This document shows, in pieces, positions 1-45,788 of a stretch of DNA of 64,000 bases. The first letter of the stretch is position 1. Every line of letters begins with the position of its first letter. Origin of the DNA: Pocillopora damicornis (taxonomy: Eukaryota); contig NW_020845867.1 of NCBI RefSeq assembly GCF_003704095.1, forward strand, positions 930,001 to 994,000. Direction: 5' to 3'. A program made the position numbers and the translations under genes. A model generated the notes under the pieces. It searched no databases. It had not been told where the DNA came from and worked only from the letters and a program-made list of their open reading frames with translations.

Positions 1-264
1 TCGCCATGCAATTGAAAATTATTCTAATTAACAGACCCTTTAATTTGTTGCCAGTAATTGAAATAGTATGCCCGTTACTTCTCTGATTCCCCAGTTTCCA
101 GTTCATTACTGAAGGCAATTTGGTTATCCTTTGTTGTGGTGCCTTCATGGTGCTTTTTTATTAGTTGGAAATCTCTTACTTTCACTTTATTTTGAGGGTT
201 TTCACCACTGATGACTGCTTTGCACTTAAACATCTCACTTAAAATAATTTCTTTTCTCCTACAG

Positions 265-3200
265 GTCCGCCACGCATCAATCTCGACAAGTCCTCGCCCT
301 CTAATCTGTATTCGTTCATTGGTAACCCTTCCCCAGTGACAATAAAGTGCCTATGGTGGGGATCTCCAGTTCCTGATATCCGCATAACAAAGGGTAATAA
401 AGAGTTACCGAGTGAAGAGGTACAATCTAATCCACCACGATTGGAGGCTACTGTAACTGTGAAAAATGATGAGGATTTTACAACCTACACATGTCACGCG
501 ACCAATGTGTACGGCTCAGCGTCTTATGACGTCGCCATCAATAAAGCCGGTAAGTGGTGTTGTCCAAAGGGATGGGAGGGTCAGGTTGGTTTGTCAATTT
601 AAGTTCCCTTCACGATAACTGTGTGAGAGTTTGAAAGTTTCATACCCAGCATGCAGTGAAGTGCTTTTCTGTTTGTTTTGTTTTGTTTGTTTTCTTTTCC
701 CTCGTTTGTTTGTTTGTTTTAACTCAATTTTAAATTTATGCTAGGAAAACCCAGTCCTCCGACAAACATCACGTTCGTTACCACATGTGATCACTTAACA
801 GTGGCCTGGAGAGAGCCGGAGTCTGATGGAGGTTTGCCACTGACGCATTACACCATAGAGCTAAAGGATGCCGGGAACTCGCTCGATGTCGTGTATATCG
901 GTGTACAAACTACAAGGTTTACCTTCACAAACCGCGAGGGCGTGAAACCGAGGACACTGTACAACGTTGCATTACAGGCTTTTAACCAACTTAATGACGG
1001 AAATAAAGGAGAGAACGATGTCGTGTCTGCTTACTGTGAGTGATATGGTGACATCTTCTTTTAAATCAAAACATGGAGCTACGCTTGTATTTTGATGTTA
1101 AGCCTAAATTTTGCAAATTTCGTTCCTTAAATCCGTTTTTATCTTCGCTATTCGTTAATAGTTCTCGACCGCTCATAGAGGATTTCAATGGGGTTAACCG
1201 ATAGCCGCAAAATGGCAAAAAAGTTTAGCCTTTAACCGTAAAAATTGAAAAATGCTTACAGTTAGTCGTAAAAAGTATTAACCATAAACAGTTTTGTTTA
1301 ATCGCAACAGAAAAAAAATTAACTGTTAGCCGTAAAATAGCCAAAATTTTGAACGATAGCCGAGAGAGCCATCAATCCATGGAGGCCCTCTTTTGAGTTT
1401 ATTATTACCTCTCAGTTTGGTGGTATTCTCTCTGACCGAAATAATTTTTTGAAGTCTCATTCGAGATGATGGTTTTTTAGTACCTCACATAAAATATCGA
1501 TCAACATGTAGAGAAGTAGTAGTCCTTTCGAAACGAGCCTGTAGAACAGGCGCCATTTTGTGAGCGGGTTCTGAGAAAGGTCTTCTCGAAAAAGAATATG
1601 AAAATTAACTAGAGATAAGGAACGACTGAGAAAACGAAAGAGTTGAGTTGTCAGAAGTCCCTTACTTTAAGCGAGACCACGCTGAAACACTAAGCGCATT
1701 GACCATTTTTCTCTTCTGTCACCACCAGGCCCTCCGAGCGGTTCCTTTAACATCACGAACACAGAGACGTGGTTAAACTCCACAAGTTTCATACTGAAAT
1801 GGACTCGCCCACTCCTGGACGGGGGTGATCCTATTCTGATTTACGACATTGAGTATAGCAAGGCTGACGCCGATGGAAAGTTTGTCCACTGGAATTCACG
1901 GAAGGGTATTGGTGCGCAAGAGTACAACGTGACAGGATTACAGGGAGGGTCTAGGTACGAGTTTAGGGTATTCGTGTCTAACATCGCTGGAAGGAAAAGA
2001 GAGCCCGCGAGGAAGGAATTTAATGTATACAGCGGTGTAGGAGGAGGACCCTCCCCAGGTAAAAACACATAAGGTTTGATCATAGTAAGTGCAGTTATAA
2101 GCTATTCATTTACAAGCCGACTGTATTGCGCAAAGGGCTTTCCTTGGCGATGACATTACGAAAATTAAGGTGGCTCTGAATAGCCCTATGGCGGACACAA
2201 GTTATCAACGGTTTACAGATAGGAAGGAAGGCTTGAAAAAAATGATGATTGGTGGGGGGGGATAAAGTTTTCAAGTTGTGTGACCTTTCCTGTTTTAAGT
2301 TTCAACACAAACAATTTTGTTCTACATAATCTCTTGTGTTTCTTTTTTTCTACGTTTGGTAAAAATTTTGGAACATCAGGCTAAGAAATTTTCCTGGGGG
2401 CTACTCGCAGTTAATATGCATCTGTCATAATCGTGTCTTTTTCCAGTTCCTGCTCATAGATGTTGTATTAGTATGTTTACAAAGCAAGACTTTCAGACTT
2501 AATCCTGACGTACCTAGCAACACCAGGTTTTTCCAGCGCAATAAAACTCTCACCCACAATCAACTCTTTTTTGTCTAAGAAATGCTGAATACGAGTTATC
2601 TATGCTACAACCGCGCGTTAATTATTTTGAACGAAGTTTTAGCCATAGCGGGGCTTTTCTAGGACATCACATACAGAGAGAAATGAAACAATTAAACTCC
2701 CGAAGTGAATTATAAAGATAAAAATATTAAGGAAACACATCTCCTAAACTGATACCGTCTGACTCTTTAATAAAATATTCATACACGGCATCCCTGTAAG
2801 GCATGTTAACTTGTAAAACAAGTTGTTAGCTTTGCGTAGTTAGTTTGTTTTATCCTTTCAAATAAGTGTTCGTTTTTACCTGAATGGAAACACCGTGTAA
2901 AAATTAAGTTTAACTATTATTACCAATACTGGAACTAATAGCTACCTTTAGTTTAGACTAAAACAGTGGATAGCGTCGAAGGCGCGCTCCGATTGGCTAT
3001 TCCAATTCCGAATATCCTTTGCTACGAGCAACTCGTGCGGGATTTGCGCCCGAAAATATTGTAATCGTTGCAGAATTGAATAAGTTAAAATCATCTTTTT
3101 GTGCTATATTATCTAACTGTTTTAGCATATTCTAAAACAACTTTTCACCTCAGTGTCGGCGGCTAGTAGTGGATATTTACCTCGCTGGTTCGCGGCTTAG

Positions 3201-6071
3201 TAAATATTAACGGCTAGCCACCTCCACTTCCGTGCATAAATGTTAATTATATATCGCTTTTCCTCCTCAAAGGTACAGGAACAGGAATACTACCCACTCA
3301 GCCAGTCCTAGTATACGACATCTCAGTCAACTGCACGTCATCTTACATGCAAGTCGACTTTGCCCTGAAATCTACTTATCTTGATGTCGAGACTTTCCGC
3401 TTTGAAAACAAATCCTGCGGTCCTCTCACCGTCAGCTCTACGCGTGTTTCCTTGAGAACACCGCTGGACGCCTGCGGGACCTCAAGTCGGCAGAGCGAGG
3501 AATCCATAACTTATTTCAACAAAGTCGTAGCACAAACCAAAGATCAGAAAACTGTGTACGTTGTCGAATTTCCGTTCTCTTGTACATACAACAGACAAGA
3601 TACAATCGGAACTCCAAGTTTTCAACCAAGAAAAAAGATCACCTTTTTTGAAGGTAAATTTTGTTATAAATTCGGGATCGGTGTGAGTATCTGAACCATC
3701 CCTTAAAACAAACAACATTCAACTGATATTAAGGTAGGGTTAATGTTGGGTTAGAGGAGGGGTTGGTGCGCAGTTTCTCATATACTGACATGGATCCTAA
3801 ATTTCTTTGTATTTTTGAGCCAAAGTGTGATCATGACGGAAATAGGAAATGTTATTTAGAGTTAAACATCCCTTGGCGAAAGCTACTGTAACACTTAAAT
3901 TCTGTAAACAAAAGAACGAAATTTCTCCTAAAATAAGAGTACAAATGTTTCAGGCGTAGTACTTTATCGTCATGATTATAATTTGTTCGTTCGCGCTCAC
4001 CCACATATCACTACCACACTCTTTTGATCACGCCTGTGTATCACGCACTCTCACTTAATCATTAATTTTGGAGTTGAACGTAAGCCCTTTTTGGAAGCAA
4101 AATGTCAGCAAAACAAAAGAAAAGAGGCCAATATAGAACTTAAGAGGTTATTTCCTCTATCTTCTTTTAGAGGGGTATGGTAACTTCTCACTTGAGATGG
4201 GTCTGTACCGAAGTGCCGAGTACTTGAAACCGTATGATGTATCAGAATACCCGGTGAACATCGACCCATTCGGTCAGTTGTACTGCCAGGCAAAATTGGA
4301 CACCTCGGACCCAGACCTCATCCTCCGTGCTGACATGTGCGTGGCCACACCCAGTATGGACCCATCACACAGCATACAGTACAAGTTTATCGACAACGGG
4401 CGAGTATTTTGTTAAATAGCATAGACGCAAGTGAAATATTGTTTGAAATTTTACTACACGTCTCGTTTAAGCATCATTGTCCTTTGTCATCAGCCACTTT
4501 TTTCTTGTTTACATAAGAGTATTCCTTTGAACTAAGAGGTGTTGCAGTAGTTCAAAATCATCTGGTCCTCATTTTTAAAGCTAGGCTTGCAGTAAAGTTG
4601 TCTATTATGATATACAGTGGGTATACAGAAGGACTATGCGGATATCAGTACATTAACTACGTCTTCAAACGTTGGAAGTAAGTAAGAAGGGTGATTGTGA
4701 GTGGGGGCTTCCGTCCCCCCTAATTAATTCTCCGAATTGTTATCAAGACACTTTTTTCCGCGAAAATTATCAGGCTGCGTAATTATCTTTTTTTTTTCTC
4801 TCACTCGACAGAGTAGGGCTATTAAAGAAAAAAAAGTAAATAAAATCAAACCGTTCCAGGACCATGCTTTTAATCCACACTATTGTTTTTGTCCTTTCCA
4901 GTTGCCCTATCGATAACGGGACAGATTACACCCACACTTTGACAGACACGCAGCGCTTTCAGCTTGTGCCGTTTCGTTGGATCGCAAATTACACTGTGGT
5001 TTATCTTCACTGTAATGTCATCGTCTGTCACAAGGAAGGAAATTCACGCTGCAGCAAAGGATGTCAGTCATCAGACCTTCGGCGCAAGAGGAGCACTGGG
5101 GACGAAGAGGAACACCGCATCACCCTCGGTCCTGTCATGCTCCGCAAACCTCTTCAATCACAGTCCTATAGGACGTTTGAAGGTAATTTTGCACTCAAAT
5201 TCTCCAAACTGTTCTCTTTGCGTTTCCAAAGGTACCGACAAGGAGAATTTGTCTGACAGTCGCGAGCATTTTAAATTGGTGATCATTTCCATTATCCTCG
5301 TGATCTTTGCATTTGATTCAAGGGTGTAACTGTAAGAAGAAAGTAGTAGTCAGTCTCCGTTTGGGGTAAAATGGATAACACTTGTTTTTATTTCTGCATT
5401 GTTTGCCCCTAACTTACTACTGGTAAAACATTGATTACGAGATTCACGAAATTGTTGAAAGGGATATGTTTACTGAGGCTTGTGGAGATCCACTCATTTA
5501 CGAAAAGAGTGGAGCATTAGGCTGCCGGAGTGTGTGGTCCTCTCTCAGCTTATCCAGCCTGTCCCAGGTATTCAGTTAGTAAAACGAAGCGCGATAGTAT
5601 ACGGTGCAGGAGTGAAAAAGGGAGGCTTGGGTTGGTTTGCGTTCTCCACGCGACCCGACCCGGCCCAGACTTCCCTCGTTTAAGTTTTGCCGACTGAAAG
5701 CCTGGAACAGGCTAAGCCTACTGCACTGACATGGTTGTGGTGCAAAATGTTCGGAGTAATCAGTTTATGAAAGTGGTCTAAGATTCGAGCATAGATTCAT
5801 TTACTCCACAATCCTCTCTTTAAAGCGTTCGTCCAGTAACACTTTCTTTATCTGGTCTGCAGATCCTGTACGTCAATCAACTAACGTTCGCAGCCTCCCT
5901 TTATGGGTAATAATTCTTGTTATTTGTGGGACAGTGGTCGGAGTTGGTTTGGTACTCATCGGCAGTGTACAGCTCTACTGCTTTGTGGCAGCAAAATCTC
6001 AAAATGGGGCAGCCGCTATCGGAGAGAGTCATTCAGAAGAGATAGAACTTTTCTGCTCCGAAAATGTTTAG
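265..6071 (+). CDS. Ig-FN3-FN3-ZP-TM cell-surface/matrix protein, NCAM-related ectodomain fused to a zona pellucida module (5' end lies upstream of the window)
   Basis: Exons 265-549 (Ig: IKC...FTTYTCHATNVYG), 745-1035 (FN3: W..PESDGGLPLTHY), 1729-2058 (FN3: LKWTRPLLDGG...YEFRV), 3273-3653 (ZP-N with 4 Cys: VNCT, KSCG, DACGT, FSCTY), 4171-4399 and 4902-5182 (ZP-C: DMCVATP, DNGCP, VYLHCNVIVC, then RRKRS furin site), 5863-6071 (TM LWVIILVICGTVVGVGLVLIGSV, short tail, TAG). All junctions keep the frame; one donor is GC. Confidence 0.9.
1178..1390. repeat. Short interspersed element with internal tagccg(t/c)aaaa repeats and imperfect terminal inverted repeats
   Basis: The motif (ga/gt)tagccg(t/c)aaaa recurs several times. 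The ends gaggatttcaatgg and ccatggaggccctc are imperfectly complementary. Confidence 0.5.
2958..3248. repeat. Interspersed repeat ending in a long imperfect palindrome
   Basis: Foldback ggctagtagtggatatttac ... gtaaatattaacggctagcc at about 3161-3220. It resembles an abundant coral repeat (from memory, not searched). Confidence 0.5.
5556..5713. mobile_element. Small MITE-like element
   Basis: Near-perfect terminal inverted repeats agcctgtcccagg / cctggaacaggct. Confidence 0.5.
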
Positions 6072-8513
6072 GTTGTCTTCTGTCTCAATTTTTTTATTAT
6101 AATATAGGCATAGAGGGGTAGGAAGATTTAGGGTAAAAAGGAATTTCAGGAAACTACAAGAGTGCGAAAGTAGAGAAAATAGTAAAGTAACTCGGGTTTA
6201 ATGAAATCTTCATTGACCTGCTTTGTATACTACCTCCTGGGAAGGCGCAGTTACGTTTCCTCGGAAAGGCGTGGGGCGCAGTCTGTGATAACTAGATTGC
6301 AAAAATAAAAGCCATGTTACAATGCGCACCGCAATTCCAAGAAAAGGAGATCGAGGTACACCTCAGGTAAATAACAGACTCGAGAGAGGGGTCCTTTCAA
6401 AGGGCTTCTGGACTCGGTCCCCACCTGAAGACCAAATGGCACAAAACAAGAAGAAAACCTGTCTAAAACAGAAGTGAAGGGTTGTGTTCGTTAAATATTT
6501 TAAGGTATCTCTGCAGCTCTGTATGCGCTTTTGCGTGCTTATATATTCTGCTTTCGTTCGTAGGATGGTCATGTTAGGCGAGCAAATTAAGCCTGGTTAA
6601 CAGAACATTTGAATACATGCTAGTTCAATTTCCGTACGTTTCTATCCAGTAAACTAAATTTTCGTTAGAAAACAATTGTGCAAATTTCAATAAATGGAAC
6701 TTACTCTTATTTCTCCTCGAGAATAACTTTTCTTGTGAAACTTCGCCAGCCTCTACTTTCCTGATTATAGGGAAGAGGTACACTATTTCTGTGCGAACAA
6801 TCTAGTTCCTAGGTATTCTCTAGGAAATAAGAGAGATTCTGGAAATGATATGGCTGTGGAAGGCGGTTGGAGAGCATATTAAACCTCGCTGAGGAGAGAG
6901 AAACATGAAACCAAAACGCCAAATCCCAGGGAGCTTAGAGAGATACTAAAAACTTCTGGAAAGGATATACTTTCGCCCCCGCCTTACGAAGCTACTCACA
7001 GTATCCTCAAAAATTCTTATTCAACCAGGTAATGAAATCAAGCCACCAGATCCATCAGATGCTAAGGCGACGCATGATACCCAAAGTTCATAAAGCGAAA
7101 TTTTTTATTTTATTATATTCTTCCTCTAACATGGAGTTTAATTACGAACTGCATTGTATTTTATACATGACATTTGTCAGTTTTACTCCTGTTGGATAAA
7201 AAGAGAGTTTGTAGGCGGCAGTTTTACGGCGTTTCTTGGTTTGTCGCGCGTCTTAGCGTAACATTAATGTGTTGCGTGACAAATATTTCAAGGACGCCTA
7301 CTGAAGCACTATCGAGTAAAAATTGTCCAAATAGAGAGGAAAAAAGAGAGGGTTCACAACTTTTTCTTGTAGAGATCAGAAAACTATAAGAATTAAAAAA
7401 AAAGATTACAAAAACAAGCAAATAAAACTACAAACCCTAACCAATCTATTACCACTACTTTTACTCCGTAAACATCAACAAATTAATATAACTATATTTT
7501 CATCAATAATACCTAAATTTACCAAATAGAATCCATAAATTTCATCTAATTTAAGTATTTGCTGAAAACCTGGGGAGCTTAATACTGAAATGCAAAGCCC
7601 TCTGTTAAAACAAATCTAATTCTTCTTTACAAACCGTTTCATCATCGATCAAAAACATACAGTATCATCACCAAACTTTCACGTGAATTTAACTGCTTTT
7701 TCCCTTCATACCTTGTGTAAATATAAAAGATATTTGAGCTCGTGAGACAAAGAAAATGCCTCGTGTTTAAGAAGGAAAAACCCTTTGAGCGCGATTTGGA
7801 GCATAATGCAGGCGGTCAATAGACAAACGCGTTGCGTGACTCACACTTCGTTAACTGTGTTCGGCTTAAAAATTACGATGTACTTAATCATCACAACCAG
7901 GCAAACGTTTCAAAAACCTCTATTAACACTCCAAGGTAAGAAACTTGGCTAAAAATTAAGAACACGTATTATCACGAAAAAACCATACGACATGAGCCGC
8001 GATTACACTTTCACTCCAAAAACATTACGTTACTGCAAAGGCCCAAGTATTGTAACACAACTGAATCCCAAGCAGAATTAGACAGCTATCATCCAGTCAG
8101 TAAACAACAACTGTCCTTCCCACGTTCACACGCTAAGCTCCCTAGCAAGCCAATGAGTAGGTTGATAATGTAAATATGTCACAACATAGAGCGGCCAATT
8201 TAAATTATATACTCAGTTGATTAACCTAATCAGTCTTGTGACACCCCCACCGACGCACCTCCGCAGTTTCTTTAGAAACTTGCCCCCTCCATTAAATGAC
8301 TGGGTTGCCTGGCAACTCAAGGACCAGAGAAAGATAAGTCCGAGCTCGGAATCGCACTCTTATCTTGTGAACCAAGAAAACCGGGTGCCATTACGATAGC
8401 TGATGTATAAATCACTACAATCGATTATTAACAAACGTACTACAAAATTTATATTGTCTTCTCAGTGAGGAATGTTTCTTGCGTTGAACTATCACTCGTC
8501 GGCACTATAAATG

Positions 8514-11500
8514 TCAGAGCAGAAGATACATCCCTCCTAGACAGATTGTAAGAAACGCTCTGGGCACGAGGCTTGATTGTGAAGATGTCTCTAAAAAAGA
8601 CAACAGTAGGGGAAAGTCAAAAAACTTACACATTCAATCCTTACTTCCTTGGTGGTACTTGGCTATCTACCATCTCATATCCAACGCGCACTTGTGGAAT
8701 AATTGTTAAAAGGTTGACGGTAAGAACCAATCAAAACGCGCGTAATGGCGCGCAAAACAGCTTATCATACAAATTAACACAGTTAACTGAGTTACATCTT
8801 ACCTTCAGGATAGTTTGTTTTGTAATACTTTATCACCTTCTCGCTTTCGCCCCCTTTATTGATGGCAACCAGGACAAATTTGTAAGTCTCTTTGTTATCC
8901 ATTTGACTGATTTTCGCCTCTTGTTTCTCGGTTTCTATCGTTTTCCAAGGTCCATCGCTTCCCTTCCTCTCAACACGGTACTCTAGTTTATATTTAATGT
9001 TACTGTCGCCTCCGTCGTCCTCAGGCCGCCGCCATTTTAATGTGAATTCGTCCTCCTCCAGAAGACTGCCCTTGGGCGAGTAGATGATTGGTCGACCCGG
9101 GGCACCTAAAGAATAGAGACAAAATGGCGGCGTTTTAAAACTGCGGTCGCACTACAGGGAAGAGAGGAGATCTCTTCTCGTAAGGTAAGGGTATTTTTTT
9201 TAATGTAATTAATTTCTAGGCGATGTGACTGTCATTGTTAGCCTTAAACAAGTGTTTAAATGAGAAAATGAAAAACTACCCCTTTGCCCAAGCCAAGAGC
9301 TGATCGAGTCAGTTTTGATCATCAGAATAAAATTTCACTATGTCGACGTTGACGTCGATGACATTAACCTCACAGACATTTTTATATTCCGTCAAGAAGT
9401 CTGTAATGACCAAATTCATCTTTAATGGTTTTCTCAAGTGCTTCTCTAACCTCGTTACTAGAGTGAATGCCCAAAACCAAAGGAAATATACAAAAGACAA
9501 ACGCAAGCACCAAGCAGTTGACCAAAACGATTTCGGTAAACAGAACATTTTTTGAGCGACAAAGGTCATGTGACCAAGAAAGGCGGGAAAACAAAAACAG
9601 GGAACCCAGCTAACAAAGTCAATAATTGACTTTACAAGAGCAGGACTCCAAGACCACTTATTTACCAAGCCTGATGAGCTGGACTTAGATCTTGACACTA
9701 TGTATTAACTACAACAGCACTCGCGCATGCTCTAATTGACCTTGACCGAGTTGACCCAGCTGGGCGCGTGGGCTAGCCAAAGTTTTTATTAAAAGAAAAG
9801 TTGACCCCGCTTGGACGGTGACACTATCGTCAAAAAAAGGGTGACCCAGCTAAGGTCTTGCTTGTGATCAATATTGTCTATTATGTTGTACTTGAAGCTG
9901 GTGCTCCTGGGGTTAAGTGGCTCTAACTCCTTTTCCCAGGAGGGGACCTCTTTGTTTTAGTTCATTGTTACATGATGTGACAGATTCTTACTTCACAGCT
10001 CTGATGAGCAGACAAAACCTTTTTGTTTGTGGGAGGTCAAAGAGCTACAGAGCAAATCCTTTTTATCATTGGTACTTCTGTTTATTATGTGACACAAGGT
10101 GTTGCTGACTTCCGGTCCATGAATGAAACTGTTTATGGTTCATGTAAAATGTATATGATGCCAACTTTTAAGTTTACAAAAGTGTGGATGAAACCCTAGC
10201 ATGTAATCATGCATATGAGAACTTGATGTAAAGGGAAGTTATATATTAATGTCATATTCTTATTAATCCTGCATGCAAGCTAATTTCAATTTTTAACCAT
10301 GAGTGTGACTAAATGTCTACAAAACCTTTTTGGAGAACATGCATATTGATGTTGGGGTGTAAAGGATTGACCAGAAGCAGCAAAATTTTGTAGGTTGTAG
10401 GTTTGTAGGGGTAACAATGATTGAATTTTACTTACAGAACTGGGTAGTCTTTGTTTCCACGACACTCATGTCTCCCCATTCTGCCTTGTTGGTAGCCCTC
10501 ACTTTGATACTGTAACGAGTGTTCCGTTCCAGGTTTCTAATCGTGTATGTTGTCGAATCACCATCAACGTTACGCGTCGTGGTTTCGTAATTCAAAACAT
10601 ATTTGTTGATAGGCATGCCACCATTTTCACTGGGCGCTTTCCAAGTAAGTTTGATACTATTGCAGGTGGGAACTGGTTTCAGACCTTGAACCTGACTTGG
10701 CTTTTCTGAAAAGCAAGACAAAAAGTTCCGATAAAGTTATTTTTACCAAACACCGCCTCCTTTTGTCTAGTGACTAGCATCCGATTTCTAATTACTCTTT
10801 ACACCCTAACATCAGTATGCAAATTCTCCATACTACTCCCTGGACATTTCCTAAGGTTCTGACAAGGAGAATTTGTTCAACAATCAAGGGCTTCTTTGGT
10901 TGGTGATCATTTCCTTTATTCTCATGACCTTAATGTTTGATTCAGCAGTAATGTTGTAAGGAGAAATTGGATGCTAATCACTCTTAGGGGTTAAGAGTTA
11001 ACAGTATCACCACTAGCACTGCATTGAACATTAAAGTCACAAGTATGAAAGAAATGACCAACAAATACAGAGCCTTAGGATTGTTAAACAATTTCTCCTT
11101 GGCCACACTACAAGAAAGTAGAAAGAACAGTAAGAGGAAATTGTATACTGATATTAGGATATGTTGGGTCAAGATCTAATAAGCGATTCATCTTTCATGC
11201 TGCTACAGAATTTCATCAAAAAAGTGGCTTATTCATAACAAAATTAACAAATTAGCTTGTTTCAAAAGGACTTTCCAAAATAACCTTCAGGGTGTACAAG
11301 CTACTTTTGTAAATTTCAGAGAAGTGACTCAGGTATACTGTCAGGAAATCCCTCTACAACAAGGTACAAATAAGTCATAAAGCCACACATTGCATACTAT
11401 ACTAACAAATCTCCTCAGTGACATTAAACAAAATTTCATACTTGCTGTTTCCATTGTCACAGTTCTATTTGTCCATCCAAACTTATTATGTGCATAACAC

Positions 11501-14500
11501 TTGTAGTCACCAAAGTACTTGATTGCATCTGTTATAACCTCGATCTCTGCTGTTCCAGTAGCATTGGACTTCAGCTTTCCATCAAAAGTCATGACAACCC
11601 AAGGTGTAGGATATCCCTCGTATTTGCAGCGTACATATGTTGGATCACTGTTCCCCACGTAAGAGAACACAGGGTTGATTGAAGCCTTCTCATCAAAAAT
11701 AGGTTTAGCTACAAGGATATATTATACATCAGTAACAGCAAGCCTGAGTGAAATCCAAATTAGTATGTGATTACCCAAGTGATAAGCATGAGTACTCTGA
11801 TGGGCACCCTCTCCCAATTATGCACCCATCCCTAAAGTCCTAATGTCAAACAAGCACCCCCCCTCCTCCCTCACTTTCTTAAATGGCAGCAACACAAGGA
11901 AAACCTGTTTCTATTGCCGCATCATTCAAAACTTTTTAAGAATCAGCTAAAGTGGAATCAGTACTGATTAGTAGCTTTTAACTAGGCATTCTATTTTAAT
12001 AAACCACCCCTCCAATTGGCCAAAATTTTAATGTATATGCTGCTTTAAGTTTGTGCAGAAAAGTTAGCTGAAACAGAACAAAACACAAAATCCATGTAAA
12101 AGAGTGTCAATCAAAAATTTACATTGCAAACAGTAGCCAAGCCTTGAAGTTGCACAAATGAGTGTACCAGAATTTAACTATCATAAGCAAGTCTTGTATA
12201 GTGTAGCAACTCACATTCAACATTTATTGTTTTGTTCAGTCTTTTAACAATTAGATTTCCATATTGGTCTTCAGCACTGTTCCATGCTTCACATGTGTAG
12301 ACTCCACCATCCTCCACCTGAATTCTTCTGAACTCAATCATACTTTGACCACGAGTTTGCTACACAAACAAGAAATACACAACCTTCTTGAAACTTTTCT
12401 GAATCCTTTAAACCCTAGGAGTGACCAGCATCTACTTTCTCCAAGCAGTAAAATTGCTGAATCATTCATTACGATCATGAAAATAAAGGAAATGATTGCC
12501 ATCTTAACAAGTTTTGATTATTAAACAAATTCTCCTTGTCAATAGCAAAGGAAATATATTGTGAAGAGTATGAAGAATATGAATACTAATGTTTTTGGTT
12601 TGGTTTAATTGAAGGATAAAATCTATCACTGATCTTATGCAATCTACCCATAATCACACAACCTTTTTCTTAATGTAATGTACCATCACCCTAACCAAAG
12701 GTGATCTAATGTAAGCGGGAGATGACTCGTTTGGTAACCAATAAGATCCTCACCTGTTCACGAGGGTCTTTCTCGCCATTCCTGGTCCATCTCACATCTG
12801 GAGTGGGATATCCTGTGGCTTGACAAATTAATTTGTAATCACCACTCATCTTTACATCCTTTGTAACACCTTGGGTCGGATTAATGTTGGGTTCAACTAA
12901 AAATAGGAAAATCAAAAATTTGTCAGTTAACTGACATCTGTAAAACGGAAATCCAATTATAATTTAATGTAGATATACCAAAGTCCACAACCTTGAACTC
13001 TGTTAATTTAAACAATCAACTAAATTGAACAGAGTCCAACTCCCCTGGATTTGACCCCCATTTTTCATATACTAACAGCTACCTCAAACTTAGTGTTAAC
13101 AACTGAGCCACCGTAAAGGGTAAAAAAGTTGATGTTTCAAGCATTAGCCCTTCATCAGAGCGATTCGATTTCAATTTTCCAATCACTCTGACCAAGGGCT
13201 AACACTTGAAACATCAGCTTTTTACCCTTTACGGTGGCTAATTTACCTTTTCAACTCAGTTGTTAACACTAAATTACCTGCTATACTCTCCCACCAATGC
13301 TGCATCACAGTTTCTTAAGAAACTTACCCCTTTACCTCAAACTTGGGTTACTTGAACTCCCTCTTGATTTTAACTAATTTTACTTTCCCTTGGCTCAAAT
13401 TTACTCTGGTAATTTAATTTAGAACATAAATTTCAGAGTGTCAAAGCACAGCTGATCACCACTGAAACAAACATGATAACAATCATGAAATTGTAGTACA
13501 TTGGGCAAAATTTCCAGACTAAACATTCTAAGAAAAAATTTTTTGAATAACAAACAAATGTACAAAATGACTATTGATTGTGCAAGAATGGTACAAACAT
13601 GATTCCTTTATTAATCACTAACAATAAAAGTGACATTCAGCACCAATTTCAATAATTCAGACCCATGCAAACTCAAACCATTTTAAGTTTCCCTTAGAAG
13701 TTTGAGTTAGCAGGGTTTTACAATACAACAACCCTAGAAAAGTGATTGTTTAGATTGTTGGTTTTTTCCAAGTCTCCTCATACAACCAAAATACCTTTCT
13801 GGTTGCAATTTAGACAGAGCCATAAACACAAAGCCAACTAAAAGAAGTAAATTCATGAATGAAAACTCCATTTGCTTAATGGATATAATTTTCTTGAGAA
13901 GTTTACCAGTAGCCTTTATTTGATGTACTAGTCCCAAAGTGGGCATGAGTGATTCATTTATTAAATGATCCACAGGAAAGAAAAAATTAACATGAGAAGA
14001 CAGGAAAATACCGAAGAGCCAGTCTTTCCAGAGTATGGCAAAACTCAACAAGATCTTATGCAAGCAAAGGAGATTCTACTGTGTAAAATCTAAGGTAAGA
14101 AAGGGAAAAAATGCATATGTATCTGCCATACTCGGCATGCAAAGAAGTGGTAATATATCCGAAAAAGATAGATAGCTGGTTAAGGATGAGGAATGCCAAA
14201 ACATTGCCAACAATAAACTAAATTACTCAAGATCCCAACTTCGTGACATAAGTGCTTTATCCATGGTACTAGCTCAAATTCCAATTTTCTTCCTGTGAAC
14301 TTGCCACTCTGGTTAATTATTACGATTTGCTGTAAATTTACTAAGCCTTACCATAAACTTCAACCACTTCAACAAAAGCTTCTGCTCGTCCAACCTGCTC
14401 TGGAGTTTCCCCTATCTCAATGTAGGCCTCACACCTATATTTGCCTTTTTCAAAAGCACTGTCAACTGTTGTGAAGGTCAGATTACCATCTTGAATTTTG

Positions 14501-17500
14501 ATGTTTCCAAATTCACTCAACTCAACATTTTTGGGGGAGAACCACTTATACTTGGGAAGAGGGTAGCCTGTGGCCTCGCACAGGAAGGTGACAGGGTATC
14601 CCTCTGTTAAGTACTTCTTTGTTTGAGCAAATGGCTTGATCTTTGGAAGTTCTGGAAGACAAAAAAAGAACATAAGTTGCTTTATTTTTAAACTTAGACA
14701 ACTTTACCCCCAAGCAAACCACTCATGGAACACAAAAAGACGTGAGACCTCTTCCCCCTGCCTTTCACAAGGAGAAGCTGAGGAAAACATGGGTCTATAA
14801 CTGATGTAGATACAACTGGTTGAATGGTATTCCATGAAGCTAAGAACATCACAAAAGTTGAGCAAAAGAAGATTGATGATTTTCAATTTAGCGAATACTG
14901 TTCATTAAGTGGCTCTGCTTGCATTACCCATGAGGAAGTGAGCTCTCCAACACTTCCCTCATTGTAACAAAATGCATCATACTTTTAACATCATCTTAAA
15001 CACTAGGGCATCTATGAAAAGTTGTTATGTGTCAGGTTACATACCTACTGCATACACCTCAATTTTCACGTCATCCTCAGTACCGTCTTGCTCAATAGCA
15101 CAGGTATAATTCCCCCCGTCTGATTTTTCCACTTTACTTATTTTTAATGAGCCATCATCTTCAATTGAGTAGCGAGAGTTTACATTTGGACCAACTCTTT
15201 TTGAGCCTTTCTTCCAGGTAAAGATTGGTGTGGGGAAGCCAGTAACGCCAAGTCTTATAGTGCCTTCTTTATCTATTTGGATGTGCTGCACAGAGACAAC
15301 ATCTGATGTGTCAACTGAAATAAACAGAGGAATTTTTGGTCAATTTTGCACTGTTCTTTATTTAAGAGAAGACACAGGAAGCATTGTTAGTTGCAGTCAG
15401 TTTCATTGAGTCTCTTCAAGTCCAGTTGTTTTCTAGGTTGCCTATGGTTGTTGACTTGTTAGATAAACCTCTATACATTACCATCAGTATGAATATCTCC
15501 ATACCATTCTATTTACGTTCCCTATGATGCTGACAAGGAGAATTTGTTTCACAATCAAGAGCTGCTCTTAATCATTTCTTCTAATCCTGTGACCTGAATG
15601 TTTGATTCAGGGGTATAATATTGTACAGAGAAATTAGATGCTGGTCACTCTCAGAGGTCAAAATGCTTACAGGAATCAGTTCTAGCCATGACCTTAAACA
15701 AACTATCAAAGGTCTGTACCTGAAAAGAGTTATGAGGGTAAAAGATGGCTTCAAGAGGGTTTTATTAAAGGACTTATAGAGAATTTATAAAAAACTACTG
15801 CAGCAGTTTAAAACTGCTGTTTGAACTTGGAAGGTTTCCGTCCAAAATCCACAATATAAGCAGCAAATATTTGCTGCTTGGGCAGAAACTACACTGGCAA
15901 CATTGGTTATAAGCAAAGTAATGTGTAACTTACATTCAACATGCACTTTCAAAGATTTTGAATTTGTGGTTCCTTTACATGTATAAGTTCCCCCGTAGGA
16001 GACCTTGACATCTGTGAGTTTGAGCTTGTGGTTATTTCCATTAGTTTCCACAAAAATTTTTTCACTGGATGATGTGGGTACTTTTTTACCAGCTGGATCA
16101 AACCATCCTATAAATCTCTCACCATCTTTCACAGTACAAGTAACACTGTTTGTCTTTCCAGGCGAGGGTGTAATGAGTGTTTTTGAAAGAGTTACAGTAG
16201 CCACTATAAAAAAAAAAAGGTAAAAAAAAAGAAGAAAAGGTAAATAAGTACTTCAAAACAATCCATTTCGCTTGATATGACTTTCAAACATTGCTATGTA
16301 AATATCAAATTTGGTAGTCTGGGCCTACATCTAATTTACCAATATATCTTGCAAACAGGTAAGGAGAATAGACAACCTCATTGGTAAGAGGGTGCTATAT
16401 TGATCAAACACCAAATTCCCCAATCCAATTTGCAAGGAAATGTGTGACAGTCAGTAGGGCGAAATACTCCTATTATCTTGGGGCCCTAAGTGAATAGGGT
16501 GCACAGAGAGGAAAGAGGTATTTAAAACTAGAAACTCAGTTTCAAAAATATAAATTAAGTGACCCATTTCCTCCATGATCCAAGTGCTAAAAACAACTTC
16601 ACACAGACAAAAGTTAAAAGTTAGGATGAAGAACATAAAAAATTTGAAAATGCGTGCACTAAAACACGTAAAGATATGTCTAGTTACACTATGCACTGGA
16701 TGACAAGCTTTGACCTTAGAGAAAAATAGAACATGCAAACAGTTTCCTCTATGCTTGTTTATCATACTTCACATGTGATGAAAAACAGCTGAGATAAAAG
16801 ATTGATGGCTTCACGAATAACATACAATTTAGTTAAATTAAAACAATTTTTTTTAACTTAACGAACAATTCAATTAAAGATTCACTCCGTTTCTTCAAGG
16901 CATTGCCTCTCTAAGGAGTCTCTAACTAACGTCAGTAGGCAAGCTGTCTTTATTAAACGTAGAGTGGACTGAATCACAACATTAAAAACAAGAAGCCTTT
17001 TTCAAAATGTTTGTTACGTGATCCTTATCAGAGATGAAACGTGCAAAATCGCAGAGCTTTCCTAAAGGTCTCGTTATATCAGCTTAATTGACGTACACTG
17101 CCGTAAAACAGAACACGTATCAAGGGAGCTTAAAACATTTACAAATCCAGAGCCGATTGATTTGGCTCAATCCTGTCATAAATTATTCAACGAGGGAAAA
17201 TCGAGGGCAATTATGAACTGTCCTTTTTAGGAGAGATATGAAAACTGGTAATTATTTCTATAGGTACTGACTTTATAATTCACTGTCAGTTAAGCTAAAC
17301 GTTAAAATTTTTTATCCAACTATCTCAGAATTTACAAAAACCGGCAGATCTTTCGCGCGCAGGACGGCATTCAAGCTCTGCTTATAACAATAGATTTTGA
17401 GTGAAACAAAACAACTTCGAATCTCTCAAGTCACGTTCGATTCAAGCTAAAAGCCCACAGAGTAAATATTTAACCGAAATGCTTTCTTTTCAATAGAACG

Positions 17501-24196: not shown

Positions 24197-27100
24197 TCAA
24201 AGCACCAGGTGAACGAACGTCGACATTATCAGAAGCGTAAGAATCGAAGTTACAACTTTTAACTCGCTGCCTGAAGATCCACGTTTTTCAGGACCTAAGA
24301 AAGAAGAGAAAATTGGCTTGGATAAAGTTTTTAACAGTTTGCTTACCTGCTAACGGTTAAGATTGCAGGTCCCTTGTCAAAATTTTTATCTCTTCCTTCC
24401 TCCAACAATTCCTTTTCGCAGCCGTTCTTGGGATGTCAAGAAACGCGTAGAACGTCTTCAAAGGCATCACCTCTTGGCGAAGGAAAATGTCGTCCGAACC
24501 AATTCCCGAAGAGTGGTGCTCTACGATTTTATTTCAGTCATAGCTTATTGCAGCAATACCAATAAAAAGAACCTATTTCGCAAGTCAACCAACCCTGAGC
24601 TTTGCTCATTAAGGAAATTATATTTGTCTCAGTAAAGACCGTGGTTTGCTCGAAAATATGCAAAGCCTCGCAAAACGTAGCTTCCTGGAACGGAGGCAAT
24701 TTCAGATACCGATCAGAATAAACGTAAACAAAATGATAAATCAATGCAACGAGAGCTAAACACAGATCGCTGGTGGCCGAGGCTTTTACACAATCAGTCA
24801 TTATTTATCGCTTTGCAGGGGTGAAGGGGGGTGGAAGATATTGGGGTCGATGACATGGTTTCAGCTGAAACCGAGGGAGAACCAGTCGTTGCCTAAAGGC
24901 TATAAAAGGGGACCATGGGAAATTGACCACTAATGAGGAAGGGGGGAGGGATGGGGATCATGAGAATATTGCAGAGCCTTATGGGGGACACGTGACATAA
25001 CCAAACTCCTTCGAACCCCACCCCACTGGCGATAAATAATGACCGATCCCTAATTCGAACAGGCCTTGGATATGCCACGTATTTCCTTACATGCAACAGT
25101 AGTATTGAGAGAAATACTTCTCCACTCTCCACCGCCAAGTGCATTGTTAGAATTCAATCGAACCTCGTATTCAGTTTTCTTTTTAAGATTTGTAAAGCTC
25201 TTGGAGCGACTTAAATTTGTTAAAGATTCCGATGCAACTGATTCGCCTCCATTCAAAAGTTTGACGGTGTAGCCTGTCACGGGGCTTCCGCCATCCTTGA
25301 GAGACGCCTCCCACGTGACCTCTACACTGTCACACGTCGATGAAGCTTGCACGTTATTTGGAGGCTCAGGAGGACCTGGAACGGAAAGATAGCAAATGCC
25401 CCACTTTTAGAATGCGACTTCCCTTAGCAAGCAAAATGAAGCAAAACAATTTCACTTGAAAACATATGCATTTTGATGCGTTTGTGTCTACCGTCTATCG
25501 TCCACTCTGAAAACCTAAAAATGCAGATGCAGGCGAAAATACATGACGCCTTTTCTTCTCAAAATTTTCAAAGCCTCCGTTTTCATTTCTCTACGAAGCC
25601 TTAAATAGAAGTGTGTATCTAAAACACTCTACTTTTGAAACAAAGGTTTGAAAAATTTCAGTTAAACTTTTTTCAAGCTGCGCAAACTGTAAAGTGATAT
25701 CCTTTGATGTCAACAAGTGAAATCGAGGCAAAACTGGCGGCAAAACAGGCGGCAGTTCGGTCCCCGTTTTCTTTTTTCTTTTTTCTTTTTAAGAATTTAA
25801 ACTCACCTCTTTCGTAAACCTCAATGTAATGTGTTACTGTACCCATCTTATTTTCAGCCACACAGCTGTAAAATCCAAAGTCCCTTGGTTTTGTAACACG
25901 AAACTTGTAGGAAACAAACCCGGATGCGTTGGAAATGCTATTCAAATTAACACCAGCGAATTGGAACTTTAATTCGGGAACTGGAAATCCATCAAATTTA
26001 CATTTCAGTGTTATTTCCTTATTACTGTCTAATGATGAAAATATCGTTCCGTGCGTGGAGCTTTCACTGATCAAAACGGGGCTATCTGCAAACAAAAAAA
26101 GAGGGCTATCATTAGGTTTGATACTCGATTAATGTAATCTCACTGGTGTCCCTGGTGTCCCTCGTCTAGACTACAACACTCTTTGATTGGTCTATAATAA
26201 TCGCCCCATACTCTCTCAGTCATTCATTCAGACTTGTTCACCTGCGTTTTGCGACACTTCTGTCCAGGCGCTTTACATTTGCACGGAGAAAGAAAGCAAT
26301 GACTTATCATCTGGAAAAGGTATACTTTTTGAGGTATTCCTCCTTTCTTTCTCTTACCGAATGCAATTACTTGTAGCGCTTGCGCACGTTCCGCCATGAA
26401 AAACACAGTATTGCAGATTTCCGCCGTTTTTTTTCGGTTGAATGAGCGCATGCTCATTTTCCGAGCGCCCAAGAGACCCAAGAGCATAAATGGGTACTAG
26501 TAAATAGGTAAATAGTAAGGAAAACCTTACTAAATTCACCTGCGATAGACTGGCATATCTTCCGGGGTAGAGGTGAGTCACAGTACTCCTTCCCGCTCTA
26601 TTCAACGGAAACGAAACGGGATAAGCTCCATCAGCATGGGCTTTTAAATCATTGTCCCTTGAGCTGACTGACCCTTAAAGATCTAAGTCAAGATCAATCG
26701 CAGGGAGCATGGGTCCTAGATTACATTTAAGTCGTTACTTCGTCCCTCTACCCTCATAATACTTACATTCGACATTCAGCCGGATTTGCGTCTTGTTCCT
26801 AGTCCCTCTACATTCGTAGGTTCCTCGGTCTGCCTTGTTGACCCTAGGGATCTCTAAGTACTTCAAACTTCCACTTGATCTTACGTGGACTCTTGCTGAC
26901 GGGTCATTAGTTATCTTCTTTCCGCTGGATGTAAACCAACCTGTAAGAGCCTCGTCTGTCGCAGAACAATTTATACTTAATTCGCCACCCTCGGGTATGG
27001 TATAATTCCCTTTGGGAACATGGACAGTGCCATCTGAAGACGAGGAAAATAACTTTTAATTTTAAGAATCAATAACTTTTTTGTTGTGTGAGGCTCAGAA

Positions 27101-45320: not shown

Positions 45321-45788
45321 CCATTGCTGTCTTCTTTCTAGCTACTTTTTCCCCTCCCCCTGAATTTTCGTTCCACTCTTCCTGGTATTGTTCAACTACT
45401 GAGATTAAGACAGGTGAGTTTCCTTCTAGAAATAAGACCCTTTGGAATGAAAATATTTCCAAACTTTGTTCCTCTTGATCACAATTGACAAACAATGTGA
45501 CTGTATGAGATCACAAATTAAACATTTCTTCAATCGGTTCAATATTTGGATATTTTCAACCTTTTTCGCCCCTTGTGTATTAGTGACCTTGCACAACCTC
45601 TCAATTATTTCTTTATTTTCGCCAGCAGAAATTTTGCCCAGCGGACTGCATCTTCAGGCCCAGTTTCTCTCTTTATCACGTGGAAACATGGTGGACGAAA
45701 TGTTTAACTTTCACAGAGTGCTATAGTGGCTCTTGATTCGATCCCTTAATCTGAGTATAGCTGAAGTTTGAGAACAATTAAATACGAA

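What the first reader, a model, noticed from the sequence alone, without database searches (positions are those of the whole stretch)
265..6071. NCAM-type Ig/FN3 ectodomain fused to a complete ZP module with polymerisation features
Seen: directly after two FN3 domains and a Gly-rich linker (SGVGGGPSPGTGTG) come ZP-N, an internal hydrophobic patch-like segment (GYGNFSLEMGLY), ZP-C, a furin site (RRKRS), an external hydrophobic patch-like segment (HRITLGPVML), a TM helix and a ~25-aa tail. Established: furin cleavage that releases the external patch triggers filament assembly in ZP proteins such as uromodulin, tectorins and egg-coat ZPs. I do not know a characterised protein with an NCAM-like Ig-FN3-FN3-ZP order. 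Inference: a shed filament that displays NCAM-like adhesion domains, possibly in mucus, egg coat, mesoglea or skeletal organic matrix.
Basis: partly seen in the sequence, partly recalled or inferred. Interest (0 to 1): 0.78.

Follow-up and report, generated by a model that had tools for sequence, protein, structure and literature searches.

The report
Coral IgCAM–zona pellucida fusion protein
This is a real, expressed coral gene in which three Ig and two FN3 adhesion domains sit on a uromodulin-type zona pellucida polymerisation module with a furin site and membrane anchor; it is conserved in stony corals and sea anemones, mislabelled "NCAM/titin-like" in databases, and has never been studied functionally.

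Summary
Window 265-6071 carries the last seven exons of a ten-exon, 889-codon gene. Three more exons (signal peptide, Ig1, Ig2) lie 0.4-3.4 kb upstream of the window.

- **Domains.** Pfam finds Ig, FN3 x2, ZP-N and ZP-C exon by exon.
- **One transcript.** RNA contigs from four studies join every exon, including the FN3|ZP-N joint 2058|3273. They also show a GC-AG intron at 4400-4901.
- **ZP module.** The ZP-C half aligns best with uromodulin and GP2. RRKRS falls on uromodulin's cleavage site, and HRITLGPV on its external hydrophobic patch.
- **Conservation.** The cysteines, R-x-x-R, the patch and the interdomain linker are conserved in orthologues from Pocillopora, Stylophora, Acropora, Montipora, a further unnamed coral transcript cluster, Nematostella, Actinia and Actinostola, and in an unnamed ENA contig; an Oculina orthologue also exists. 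IgCAM neighbours are found beside the gene in four of these genomes.
- **Prior knowledge.** RefSeq calls these proteins NCAM-, titin- or twitchin-like. The probable Nematostella orthologue is listed as "NvIgCamZP" in a 2025 matrisome supplement and was quantified in mesoglea. No functional study was found.

Polymerisation after furin cleavage is the most likely mechanism (about 0.55) but is inferred, not shown. A role specific to the skeleton is unlikely. I rate it a new variant of a known kind, of moderate interest.

The parts
265..549 (+). Exon encoding Ig domain 3 (phase 1 at both ends). It is spliced upstream to the Ig2 exon at L003:9324-9617.
   Evidence: Pfam Ig_2/Ig_3/I-set. RNA joint 549|745 in 4 runs. 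The loose end before 264 reads the last codons of the Ig2 exon. 100% identical to P0122 residues 222-318.
745..1035 (+). Exon encoding FN3 domain 1.
   Evidence: Pfam fn3, 1.7e-9. Joints 549|745 and 1035|1729, both GT..AG, in 4 runs.
1729..2058 (+). Exon encoding FN3 domain 2 and the first part of the Gly/Pro-rich spacer.
   Evidence: Pfam fn3, 1e-12. Joint 2058|3273 in 4 runs of 4 studies.
3273..3653 (+). Exon encoding the rest of the spacer, ZP-N (about 3332-3592, four conserved Cys) and most of the ZP-N/ZP-C interdomain linker.
   Evidence: Pfam ZP-N, 7.8e-11. C1-C4 are invariant in 8 orthologues, and the linker is the most conserved segment, with 10 of 21 residues invariant.
4171..4399 (+). 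Exon encoding the IHP / first ZP-C strand (4173-4208) and the first half of ZP-C. It ends in phase 2.
   Evidence: Pfam ZP-C profile positions 2-75, 9.8e-15. Joint 3653|4171 in 4 runs. The G-x-G-N-F-S-F-x-M-x-L motif is invariant.
4400..4901 (+). GC-AG intron. It is retained in some RNA contigs, and read-through gives a stop after four codons.
   Evidence: Joint 4398->4901, movable by one base, in 3 runs, which gives GC..AG. Retained in X1 record 4 and X5 record 6. The donor reads GCGAGT here and GTGAGT in Stylophora and Actinia.
4902..5182 (+). Exon encoding the second half of ZP-C (to about 5055), the consensus furin site RRKR (5080-5091) and the external hydrophobic patch (5113-5142).
   Evidence: Pfam ZP-C profile positions 71-133. 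The phmmer alignment to uromodulin (6zs5, 1.1e-6) puts RRKRS on RFRS and the EHP on uromodulin's EHP. R787, R790, H798, T801, L802, G803 and P804 are invariant.
5863..6071 (+). Last coding exon: spacer, transmembrane segment (5895-5993), 25-residue cytoplasmic tail (5994-6068) and TAG stop (6069-6071).
   Evidence: Joint 5182|5863 in 4 runs. AF2 predicts a helix at residues 835-865 of the near-identical P0122. The tail motif SEE-x-EL-x-x-EN-V/A is conserved among corals.

Best explanation
The region holds exons 4-10 of a single-copy gene. The gene encodes an 889-residue type I membrane glycoprotein precursor with this order:
- signal peptide
- three I-set Ig domains
- two FN3 domains
- a short Gly/Pro spacer
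- a uromodulin-type ZP module: ZP-N, a conserved linker and ZP-C
- a furin-type site (R-R-K-R)
- the external hydrophobic patch
- a transmembrane helix
- a 25-residue tail

**Shown:** the gene structure, its expression as one mRNA, the domain composition, and conservation of every ZP processing element across Hexacorallia.

**Inferred mechanism.** The precursor travels to the cell surface with the external patch docked into ZP-C as a blocking strand. A proprotein convertase then cuts at R787-R790. The patch, TM and tail stay behind. The freed ZP modules assemble head-to-tail into filaments, as uromodulin, GP2, the tectorins and egg-coat proteins do. The roughly 20 nm Ig3-FN3(2) arm would project sideways from the filament core. 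This gives an extracellular polymer studded with IgCAM-type binding arms, in a pericellular, apical or mesogleal matrix common to corals and sea anemones.

The gene most likely arose in an anthozoan ancestor by joining an NCAM-like gene of a local IgCAM cluster to a ZP gene.
For: **Gene and transcript**
- Exon model with consistent phases.
- All joints seen in RNA contigs of 4 studies.
- The transcript-derived protein P0122 matches all ten exons at 88-100% identity over the coding parts (97% in the signal-peptide exon; lower figures come from alignments that run past exon ends), including the signal-peptide exon L003:6626-6713.

**Domains**
- Pfam on the window exons and the upstream exons.
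- Foldseek gives RPTP sigma/delta and NCAM2 for the arm, and 4wrn uromodulin (E 2e-13) for the ZP part.

**Processing elements**
- The phmmer alignment to uromodulin and GP2 places the furin site and the EHP on their uromodulin counterparts.
- Invariant in 8 orthologues: 4 + 6 Cys, the count I recall for uromodulin's ZP module; R-x-x-R; H-x-x-T-L-G-P; and the IHP strand with its N-F-S sequon.
- The interdomain linker, which forms the filament interface in uromodulin (established knowledge), is the most conserved segment, at 71% mean pairwise identity.
- The AF2 model has a disordered loop at 783-794, a strand at 797-807 and a helix at 835-865.

**Conservation**
- Orthologues occur in five named scleractinian genera plus an unnamed coral transcript cluster, and in three actiniarian genera.
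- An unnamed ENA contig has the same exon order, R-x-K-R, EHP and TM.
- The gene is single-copy in this genome.
- IgCAM genes on the minus strand flank it on both sides here and in Nematostella, and lie downstream in Stylophora and the ENA contig.

**Matrix location**
- NV2.21903 'NvIgCamZP', whose neighbour NV2.21902 is NCAM-1-like just as in L006, has quantitative MS values in decellularised mesoglea (PMC12549020 supplement).
Against: - No experiment shows cleavage or filaments for any member.
- The trimer modelling job gave no verdict.
- The tail is conserved among corals. That is unexpected if the stub is merely discarded, and it recalls the non-polymerising ZP co-receptors endoglin and betaglycan.
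- The identity of NV2.21903 with the NCBI Nematostella protein P0011 rests on its name, its chromosome and its neighbour, not on sequence.
- Membrane proteins can contaminate mesoglea preparations.
- Corals have an extra, unpaired-looking Cys (C689) in ZP-C that sea anemones lack.
- The tissue and cell type of expression in corals are unknown.
Confidence: 0.55

Rival explanations
1. It is a non-polymerising cell-surface adhesion receptor or co-receptor. The ZP module serves as a membrane-proximal stalk or dimerisation unit, as in endoglin and betaglycan. The IgCAM arm binds ligands or other cells, and the conserved tail recruits cytoplasmic partners. The basic site is used rarely or only for turnover.
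For: - A TM segment and a tail motif are conserved among corals.
- Bergheim et al. filed the Nematostella protein under 'adhesome / receptor proteins'.
- The flanking paralogues are ordinary IgCAMs.
- The self-assembly model gave no support, though that is not evidence against assembly.
Against: - R-x-x-R followed by an EHP at uromodulin spacing is invariant over the coral-anemone divergence. From my own knowledge, endoglin and betaglycan lack this cleavage-plus-patch arrangement.
- By sequence, the closest solved relatives are the polymerising uromodulin and GP2, well ahead of betaglycan (E 1e-6 against 0.05).
- The interdomain linker is the most conserved part.
- The tail is poorly conserved between corals and sea anemones.
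Confidence: 0.28
2. It is a sheddase substrate only. Furin-type cleavage releases a soluble, non-filamentous Ig-FN3-ZP ectodomain that acts as a diffusible adhesion modulator or opsonin.
For: - The cleavage motif is conserved.
- The probable Nematostella orthologue is detected in an extracellular preparation.
Against: - A conserved EHP, IHP and linker are not needed for simple shedding.
- A decellularised, washed mesoglea preparation favours insoluble components.
- No data distinguish the soluble form from the polymeric one.
Confidence: 0.12
3. It is a skeleton- or egg-coat-specific structural protein. This covers the reader's more specific placements.
For: - ZP proteins occur in coral skeletal proteomes and in cnidarian egg envelopes (PMC7115838, PMC13361971).
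- NvIgCamZP has low expression in primary oocytes.
Against: - The gene is conserved in non-calcifying sea anemones.
- The Stylophora orthologue's accession is absent from the skeletal proteome paper's main text and tables. The ZP protein listed there is a different gene, XP_022806326.
- In the part of the Nematostella table that is held, the highest values are in mitotic stem/germ-line-like states, and the gene is on the list of cnidocyte-expressed ECM genes rather than being oocyte-specific.
Confidence: 0.04
4. It is an annotation or assembly artefact in which two neighbouring genes (an IgCAM and a ZP gene) are read as one.
For: - IgCAM genes are clustered here.
- Old models differ in length (A7RYG1 is 1063 aa), and an Acropora millepora model (632 aa) lacks a ZP part.
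Against: - Single RNA contigs cross the FN3|ZP-N joint in four independent studies.
- The reading phase is kept across all joints.
- The same order is found in many genomes and transcriptomes.
Confidence: 0.01

Closest known systems
Uromodulin (UMOD) and GP2
   Same: - A ZP module with 4 + 6 conserved Cys.
- A basic cleavage site, about ten residues, then an L-G-P-containing external hydrophobic patch, then a membrane anchor.
- N-terminal recognition domains carried as arms.
- These are the best sequence matches among solved structures, and uromodulin (4wrn) is the fold match for the ZP part.
   Different: - The arms are EGF/D8C domains, not Ig/FN3.
- The anchor is GPI, not a TM helix with a tail.
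- Uromodulin's site is cut by hepsin (RFRS), whereas this protein has a classical furin R-R-K-R.
- They are vertebrate proteins and are not orthologues of this gene.
[quoted passage not shown] 2025, PMC12549020 supplement)
   Same: - Very probably the sea-anemone orthologue (NCBI XP_032241001.2, 'titin isoform X1').
- Same Ig-Ig-Ig-FN3-FN3-ZP-TM order, and 42% identity between P0011 and the near-identical proxy P0122.
- An NCAM-like neighbour gene, and the same intron position inside ZP-C.
   Different: - It exists only as a table entry, with no functional, localisation or biochemical study.
- The link between the NV2 identifier and the NCBI protein is inferred from name, chromosome and neighbours, not from sequence.
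NCAM / LAR-type RPTP ectodomains (IgCAM superfamily)
   Same: - I-set Ig domains followed by FN3 domains.
- Phase-1 domain exons.
- Best fold matches are 4pbx, 2jll and 4yh7.
- The RefSeq names are NCAM1/2-like.
   Different: - Three Ig domains rather than NCAM's five.
- No NCAM cytoplasmic domain and no phosphatase domain.
- A ZP module lies between the FN3 domains and the membrane, which no characterised IgCAM has.
Endoglin / betaglycan (TGFBR3)
   Same: - A type I membrane protein with a ZP module next to the membrane and a short conserved tail.
- A ligand-binding region N-terminal to the ZP module.
   Different: - From my own knowledge, those proteins do not polymerise and lack the conserved furin-site-plus-EHP arrangement.
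- The sequence match is much weaker (E 0.05-0.17).
Amphioxus 'TECTA' CAH1266756 (P0039), and a chordate EGF/FN3/ZP cluster in the ESM Atlas
   Same: Two FN3 domains lie directly before ZP-N. This shows that FN3-ZP adjacency exists elsewhere (one search is a lead only).
   Different: - NIDO-VWD-C8 domains upstream and SEA-EGF domains downstream.
- No Ig domains.
- Not related beyond the shared modules.

Membership tests
ZP-module proteins (polymerising type, uromodulin-like) | A ZP-N domain with four conserved cysteines | tested here: met
   Pfam PF23344, 7.8e-11 on the exon at 3273-3653. C544, C572, C591 and C627 are invariant in 8 orthologues.
ZP-module proteins (polymerising type, uromodulin-like) | A ZP-C domain with the conserved cysteine set | tested here: met
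   Pfam PF00100 on both ZP-C exons and 3.6e-28 on P0122. Six Cys are invariant (707, 728, 764, 769, 777, 781). The four in the second ZP-C exon (764, 769, 777, 781) align with uromodulin's. Disulfide connectivity itself cannot be tested here.
ZP-module proteins (polymerising type, uromodulin-like) | A consensus furin-type cleavage site just after ZP-C | tested here: met
   RRKR at 5080-5091. R-x-x-R is invariant in 8 orthologues and reads R-T-K-R in the ENA contig. It aligns on uromodulin's RFRS. Cleavage itself was not tested.
ZP-module proteins (polymerising type, uromodulin-like) | An external hydrophobic patch between the cleavage site and the membrane anchor | tested here: met
   HRITLGPVML aligns on uromodulin's EHP. 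H, T, L, G and P are invariant. AF2 predicts a strand at 797-807.
ZP-module proteins (polymerising type, uromodulin-like) | An internal hydrophobic patch / first ZP-C strand after a conserved interdomain linker | tested here: met
   The Pfam ZP-C match starts at profile position 2, on G-N-F-S. The motif is invariant, and the linker is the most conserved segment.
ZP-module proteins (polymerising type, uromodulin-like) | A C-terminal membrane anchor in the precursor | tested here: met
   A 33-residue hydrophobic segment at 5895-5993. AF2 predicts a helix at 835-865. It is present in all full-length orthologues.
ZP-module proteins (polymerising type, uromodulin-like) | Assembly into filaments after cleavage | tested here: inconclusive
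   Three copies of residues 530-790 of P0122 scored 0.19, below the mark of 0.32. The tool's verdict was 'no answer'. This needs experiment.
NCAM (neural cell adhesion molecule) orthologue | Five Ig domains followed by two FN3 domains | tested here: not met
   There are only three Ig exons between the signal-peptide exon and FN3-1. A neighbouring minus-strand gene at window 8795-16252 has about five Ig-like exons plus two FN3 exons; only one Ig exon and both FN3 exons were checked with Pfam.
NCAM (neural cell adhesion molecule) orthologue | FN3 domains followed directly by a membrane anchor and the NCAM cytoplasmic domain | tested here: not met
   A ZP module of about 270 residues follows FN3-2. 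The tail is 25 residues with no Pfam match.
Endoglin/betaglycan-type non-polymerising ZP co-receptors | A ZP module without the cleavage-site-plus-EHP release mechanism | tested here: not met
   The cleavage site and EHP are present and conserved. That those proteins lack them is from my own knowledge.

The most novel reading that the evidence does not exclude
Anthozoans build an extracellular ZP filament whose side arms are IgCAM adhesion domains. It would be a polymeric, matrix-bound form of an NCAM-like adhesion molecule that lets cells adhere to, or be guided along, a self-made rail. The gene would have arisen by fusing neighbouring NCAM-like and ZP genes in a cluster that has stayed together since before corals and sea anemones split. 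That would be a mode of adhesion not described in any animal: IgCAM recognition delivered by a furin-triggered polymer rather than by a membrane receptor.
Probability: 0.3. Interest if true: 0.62.

Novelty: new variant of a known kind. Interest (0 to 1): 0.4.

Why it matters
ZP modules are the polymerisation engine of egg coats, urinary uromodulin filaments and the inner-ear tectorial membrane. What each polymer does depends on the domains it displays.

This family would be the first in which the displayed arm is a classical IgCAM ectodomain. It links the two main metazoan strategies for extracellular recognition: membrane IgCAMs and polymeric apical matrices.

It is single-copy and conserved in both corals and the tractable model Nematostella. 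Knock-out, tagging and furin-site mutants are therefore feasible.

It also corrects misleading database names (titin, twitchin, NCAM1/2-like) that hide the ZP module from people mining coral adhesion, mucus or matrix genes.

Tried and rejected
**Tests that gave nothing usable**
- Complex prediction on three copies of the mature ZP module (P0122 residues 530-790) returned no verdict (score 0.19 against a mark of 0.32). I do not use it as evidence either way.
- phmmer of the ZP-N exon against PDB sequences gave only chance-level hits (protein-glutaminase, E 0.17). The ZP-N assignment rests on Pfam and on the fold match to 4wrn.

**Literature**
- Searches for domain words plus coral, Stylophora or Nematostella, and for twelve orthologue accessions plus the NV2 name, found no paper discussing this architecture.
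- The 2026 ZP review (PMC13361971) does not mention Ig/FN3-ZP proteins.
- The Stylophora skeletal proteome papers do not name the orthologue in their main text.
- The held supplements of the Stylophora cell atlas do not contain it.

**An idea I rejected: a regulated truncated isoform**
- RefSeq lists an 'isoform X2' of 711-725 aa in Nematostella, Actinia, Stylophora, Acropora digitifera and Oculina. All end at the ZP-C(a) exon.
- These are explained by read-through of the next intron, which has an immediate in-frame stop (GG|GTGA, GG|GTAG).
- The donor is a consensus GTGAGT in Stylophora and Actinia, so a conserved weak splice site is not supported.

**Range of the family**
- A word-indexed profile search found no Ig+FN3+ZP protein outside Hexacorallia.
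- That search draws its words only from the first 500 residues and caps candidates, so absence elsewhere is not established.
- The ESM Atlas gave only a weak lead to chordate EGF/FN3/ZP proteins.

Exons were searched by reference.
- The database protein P0122, which matches the window exons at 94-100% identity apart from the terminal-exon alignment that extends into intron sequence, stood in for full-length analyses.
- Runs of N upstream (in L003 and L004) were left as they are.

Full report
**What is there.**

The window is G000:C2502:930001-994000 of a 234-Mb, 4393-contig assembly. The closest database proteins are from Pocillopora.

Stop-free stretches and splice signals on the + strand give seven exons between 265 and 6071: 265-549, 745-1035, 1729-2058, 3273-3653, 4171-4399, 4902-5182 and 5863-6071.
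- The introns flanking the Ig, FN3 and ZP-N exons, and the last intron (5183-5862), are phase 1.
- The intron inside ZP-C is phase 2 and has a GC donor.

Pfam, run exon by exon by reference, gives the following, all above the curated cut-offs:

| Exon | Pfam family | E-value |
|---|---|---|
| 265-549 | Ig_2 / Ig_3 / I-set | 6e-8 |
| 745-1035 | fn3 | 1.7e-9 |
| 1729-2058 | fn3 | 1e-12 |
| 3273-3653 | ZP-N | 7.8e-11 |
| 4171-4399 | ZP-C, profile 2-75 | 9.8e-15 |
| 4902-5182 | ZP-C, profile 71-133 | 2.8e-8 |

- the Gly-rich spacer across the 2058|3273 joint
- GYGNFSLEMGLY at 4173-4208
- RRKR at 5080-5091
- HRITLGPVML at 5113-5142
- a 33-residue hydrophobic segment at 5895-5993
- a 25-residue tail
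- TAG at 6069-6071

**One gene, one transcript.**

I laid RNA contigs from four runs of four different studies on 250-6100.
- The runs were poly-A or random-primed coral and marine metatranscriptomes.
- All six joints appear at exactly the predicted places, five with GT..AG ends. Four of them, including 2058|3273, are in all four runs.
- The joint 4399|4902 is seen in three runs. Its ends read GC..AG once the one-base ambiguity is resolved.
- Single contigs run Ig3-FN3-FN3-ZP-N-ZP-C(a) (X5 record 5, 2281 nt; X9 record 11), and ZP-N through to the tail (X6 record 10).
- The loose end before 264 reads the last codons of an Ig exon that I found upstream.

**Upstream exons.**

I fetched 30 kb upstream. 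The N runs in it were left untouched.
- Two more Ig exons lie at L003:8297-8578 and L003:9324-9617 (Pfam I-set/Ig_3).
- A scan for ATG, a hydrophobic stretch and a phase-1 donor gave one strong candidate signal-peptide exon, L003:6626-6713.
- The transcript-derived protein P0122 (889 aa, 64 cluster members) matches all ten exons at 88-100% identity over the coding parts. Lower values come from alignments that run past exon ends. The signal-peptide exon matches at 97%.
- P0122 has exactly the length my model predicts, 889 codons.

P0122 served as the full-length proxy.

**What kind of ZP module.**

The second ZP-C exon finds uromodulin (6zs5, E 1.1e-6) and GP2 (8xc5) as its best solved relatives. 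ZP2 and betaglycan score far lower.

In that alignment:
- the four cysteines of this exon coincide with uromodulin's
- RRKRS lies on uromodulin's RFRS cleavage site
- HRITLGPV lies on uromodulin's external hydrophobic patch

An eight-orthologue alignment (A1) shows these as invariant:
- four ZP-N and six ZP-C cysteines
- R787 and R790
- H798, T801, L802, G803 and P804
- the first ZP-C strand, with its N-F-S sequon

The ZP-N/ZP-C linker is the most conserved segment of the whole protein. It has 48% invariant columns and 71% mean pairwise identity, against 45-61% for the domains and under 30% for the spacer, TM and tail. In uromodulin filaments that linker forms the subunit interface (established knowledge, not tested here).

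An AlphaFold2 model of P0122 has domain pLDDT values of 70-88. It shows a disordered loop at the cleavage site (783-794), a strand at 797-807 and a helix at 835-865.

Foldseek matches the arm to RPTP sigma/delta and NCAM2 fragments. It matches the ZP part to the uromodulin polymerisation region (4wrn, E 2e-13).

**Distribution.**

An all-against-all HMMER search with the ZP-N exon found one full-length relative among many exon fragments. It is P0011, Nematostella 'titin isoform X1', with the same Ig x3, FN3 x2, ZP-N, ZP-C order.

Word-indexed searches and cluster look-ups added orthologues from these taxa:
- Pocillopora verrucosa and P. meandrina
- Stylophora pistillata
- Acropora muricata, A. 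palmata and A. digitifera
- Montipora foliosa and M. capricornis
- Oculina patagonica
- Actinia tenebrosa
- Actinostola

RefSeq names them NCAM1-like, NCAM2-like, titin, twitchin-like or uncharacterised.

A more distant copy lies on an unnamed 885-kb ENA contig (L009).
- It is 36-49% identical to both coral and anemone proteins.
- It has the same exon order, R-T-K-R, an EHP and a TM segment.

Other points on distribution:
- In this genome the gene is single-copy among at least 24 ZP-N exons.
- A profile search found no Ig+FN3+ZP protein outside Hexacorallia. That search is not exhaustive.
- FN3-FN3-ZP adjacency without Ig exists in an amphioxus 'TECTA'.

**Neighbourhood.**

The gene sits in a cluster of IgCAM paralogues, all on the minus strand:
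- one upstream, at L005:7460 to 378
- two downstream, at window 16252 to 8795 and 27055 to 25053

Elsewhere:
- Minus-strand Ig/FN3 genes flank the orthologue on both sides in Nematostella (L006).
- A minus-strand Ig/FN3 gene lies downstream of it in Stylophora (L007) and in the ENA contig.
- In Nematostella a ZP-only protein (P0024) lies on the same chromosome-scale contig. The catalogue's NvZP-3, NV2.21905, is numbered two genes away and is in the same orthogroup as NvIgCamZP. P0024 may be NvZP-3.

This fits an origin by fusion of adjacent IgCAM and ZP genes before the coral-anemone split. That origin is an inference.

**What is already known.**

No paper text mentions these accessions or this architecture.

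The supplement of Bergheim et al. 2025 (eLife, PMC12549020) does list it.
- It has quantitative values in the mesoglea mass-spectrometry comparison.
- It is also in the list of 298 ECM genes detectable in cnidocyte states.
- In the part of the table that is held, its highest values are in mitotic stem/germ-line-like states.
- Its neighbour NV2.21902 is 'NCAM-1-like / hemicentin-1'. That matches the NCBI neighbourhood of P0011, so the identification is very probable. It is not proven by sequence.

The Stylophora orthologue's accession is not in that coral's skeletal proteome paper's main text and tables.

**Mechanism.**

Shown:
- the architecture
- its expression
- conservation of every element that controls assembly in characterised ZP proteins

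Inferred:
- The precursor is kept assembly-incompetent by the docked external patch.
- A furin-type convertase cuts at R787-R790.
- The ectodomain polymerises through ZP-N, the linker and ZP-C.
- The Ig3-FN3(2) arm projects from the filament.

I put this at about 0.55. The main rival is a non-polymerising surface receptor (0.28). The coral-conserved tail and the absence of any assembly data keep it alive. Shedding of a soluble ectodomain (0.12) is a third option.

The single self-assembly modelling job gave no verdict and is not counted.

A skeleton-specific role is unlikely, because the family is conserved in sea anemones.

**Verdict.**

- This is a conserved, uncharacterised hexacorallian (possibly wider) family that puts an IgCAM ectodomain on a uromodulin-type ZP polymerisation module.
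- It is a new variant of a known kind. It is already present in databases and in one catalogue, under names that mostly hide what it is.
- Interest is moderate. ZP modules are known to accept many N-terminal partners. This partner is new among studied proteins, and the family is experimentally tractable in Nematostella.

Noticed in passing
window 4400-4901: This is a GC-AG intron, with donor GCGAGT where Stylophora and Actinia have GTGAGT. It is retained in some RNA contigs: X1 record 4, where the next intron is spliced, and X5 record 6. Read-through ends the protein after four extra codons. RefSeq 'isoform X2' models of 711-725 aa in five other genera all end at this same exon boundary, where the intron starts with an in-frame stop.
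   Followed up: yes
window 8795-16252 (-) and 25053-27055 (-); L005:378-7460 (-): Three paralogous IgCAM genes (Ig and FN3 exons, no ZP) flank the gene. The arrangement is IgCAM(-) | IgCAM-ZP(+) | IgCAM(-). IgCAM genes also flank the orthologue on both sides in Nematostella (L006), and one lies downstream of it in Stylophora (L007) and in an unnamed ENA contig (L009).
   Followed up: partly
L003:4411-5306 (G000:C2502:924411-925306): Open frames resembling a reverse transcriptase of a non-LTR retroelement lie between the upstream IgCAM gene and the signal-peptide exon. Two N runs (about 300 bases each) lie in L003 and L004, and were left as they are.
   Followed up: no
window 45765-51131 (+): A DEAD-box RNA helicase gene. 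Pfam finds DEAD on two exons and Helicase_C on a third. It begins with a long acidic and lysine-rich N-terminal exon.
   Followed up: partly
window 38550-43266 (+): Exons of an adaptor-complex medium (mu) subunit-like gene. Pfam Adap_comp_sub matches 42856-43266. The exon at 38550-38957 has no Pfam match.
   Followed up: no
window 62455-63453 (-): A 333-codon open stretch on the minus strand with no Pfam match at E 0.001.
   Followed up: no
P0122 residue 689 (window exon 4171-4399): Corals have a seventh cysteine in ZP-C (L-Y-C-Q/E-A-K) that the three sea-anemone orthologues lack (A or none). It has no obvious partner in the uromodulin disulfide pattern.
   Followed up: no
L010 (ENA ERZ26858540 contig): A ZP-only relative (ZP-N plus two ZP-C exons, 30-42% identical) with no Ig or FN3 exons in the 10 kb upstream. 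It is comparable to the ZP-only Nematostella paralogue P0024 (XP_032232542.2) on the same chromosome as the Nematostella orthologue.
   Followed up: partly
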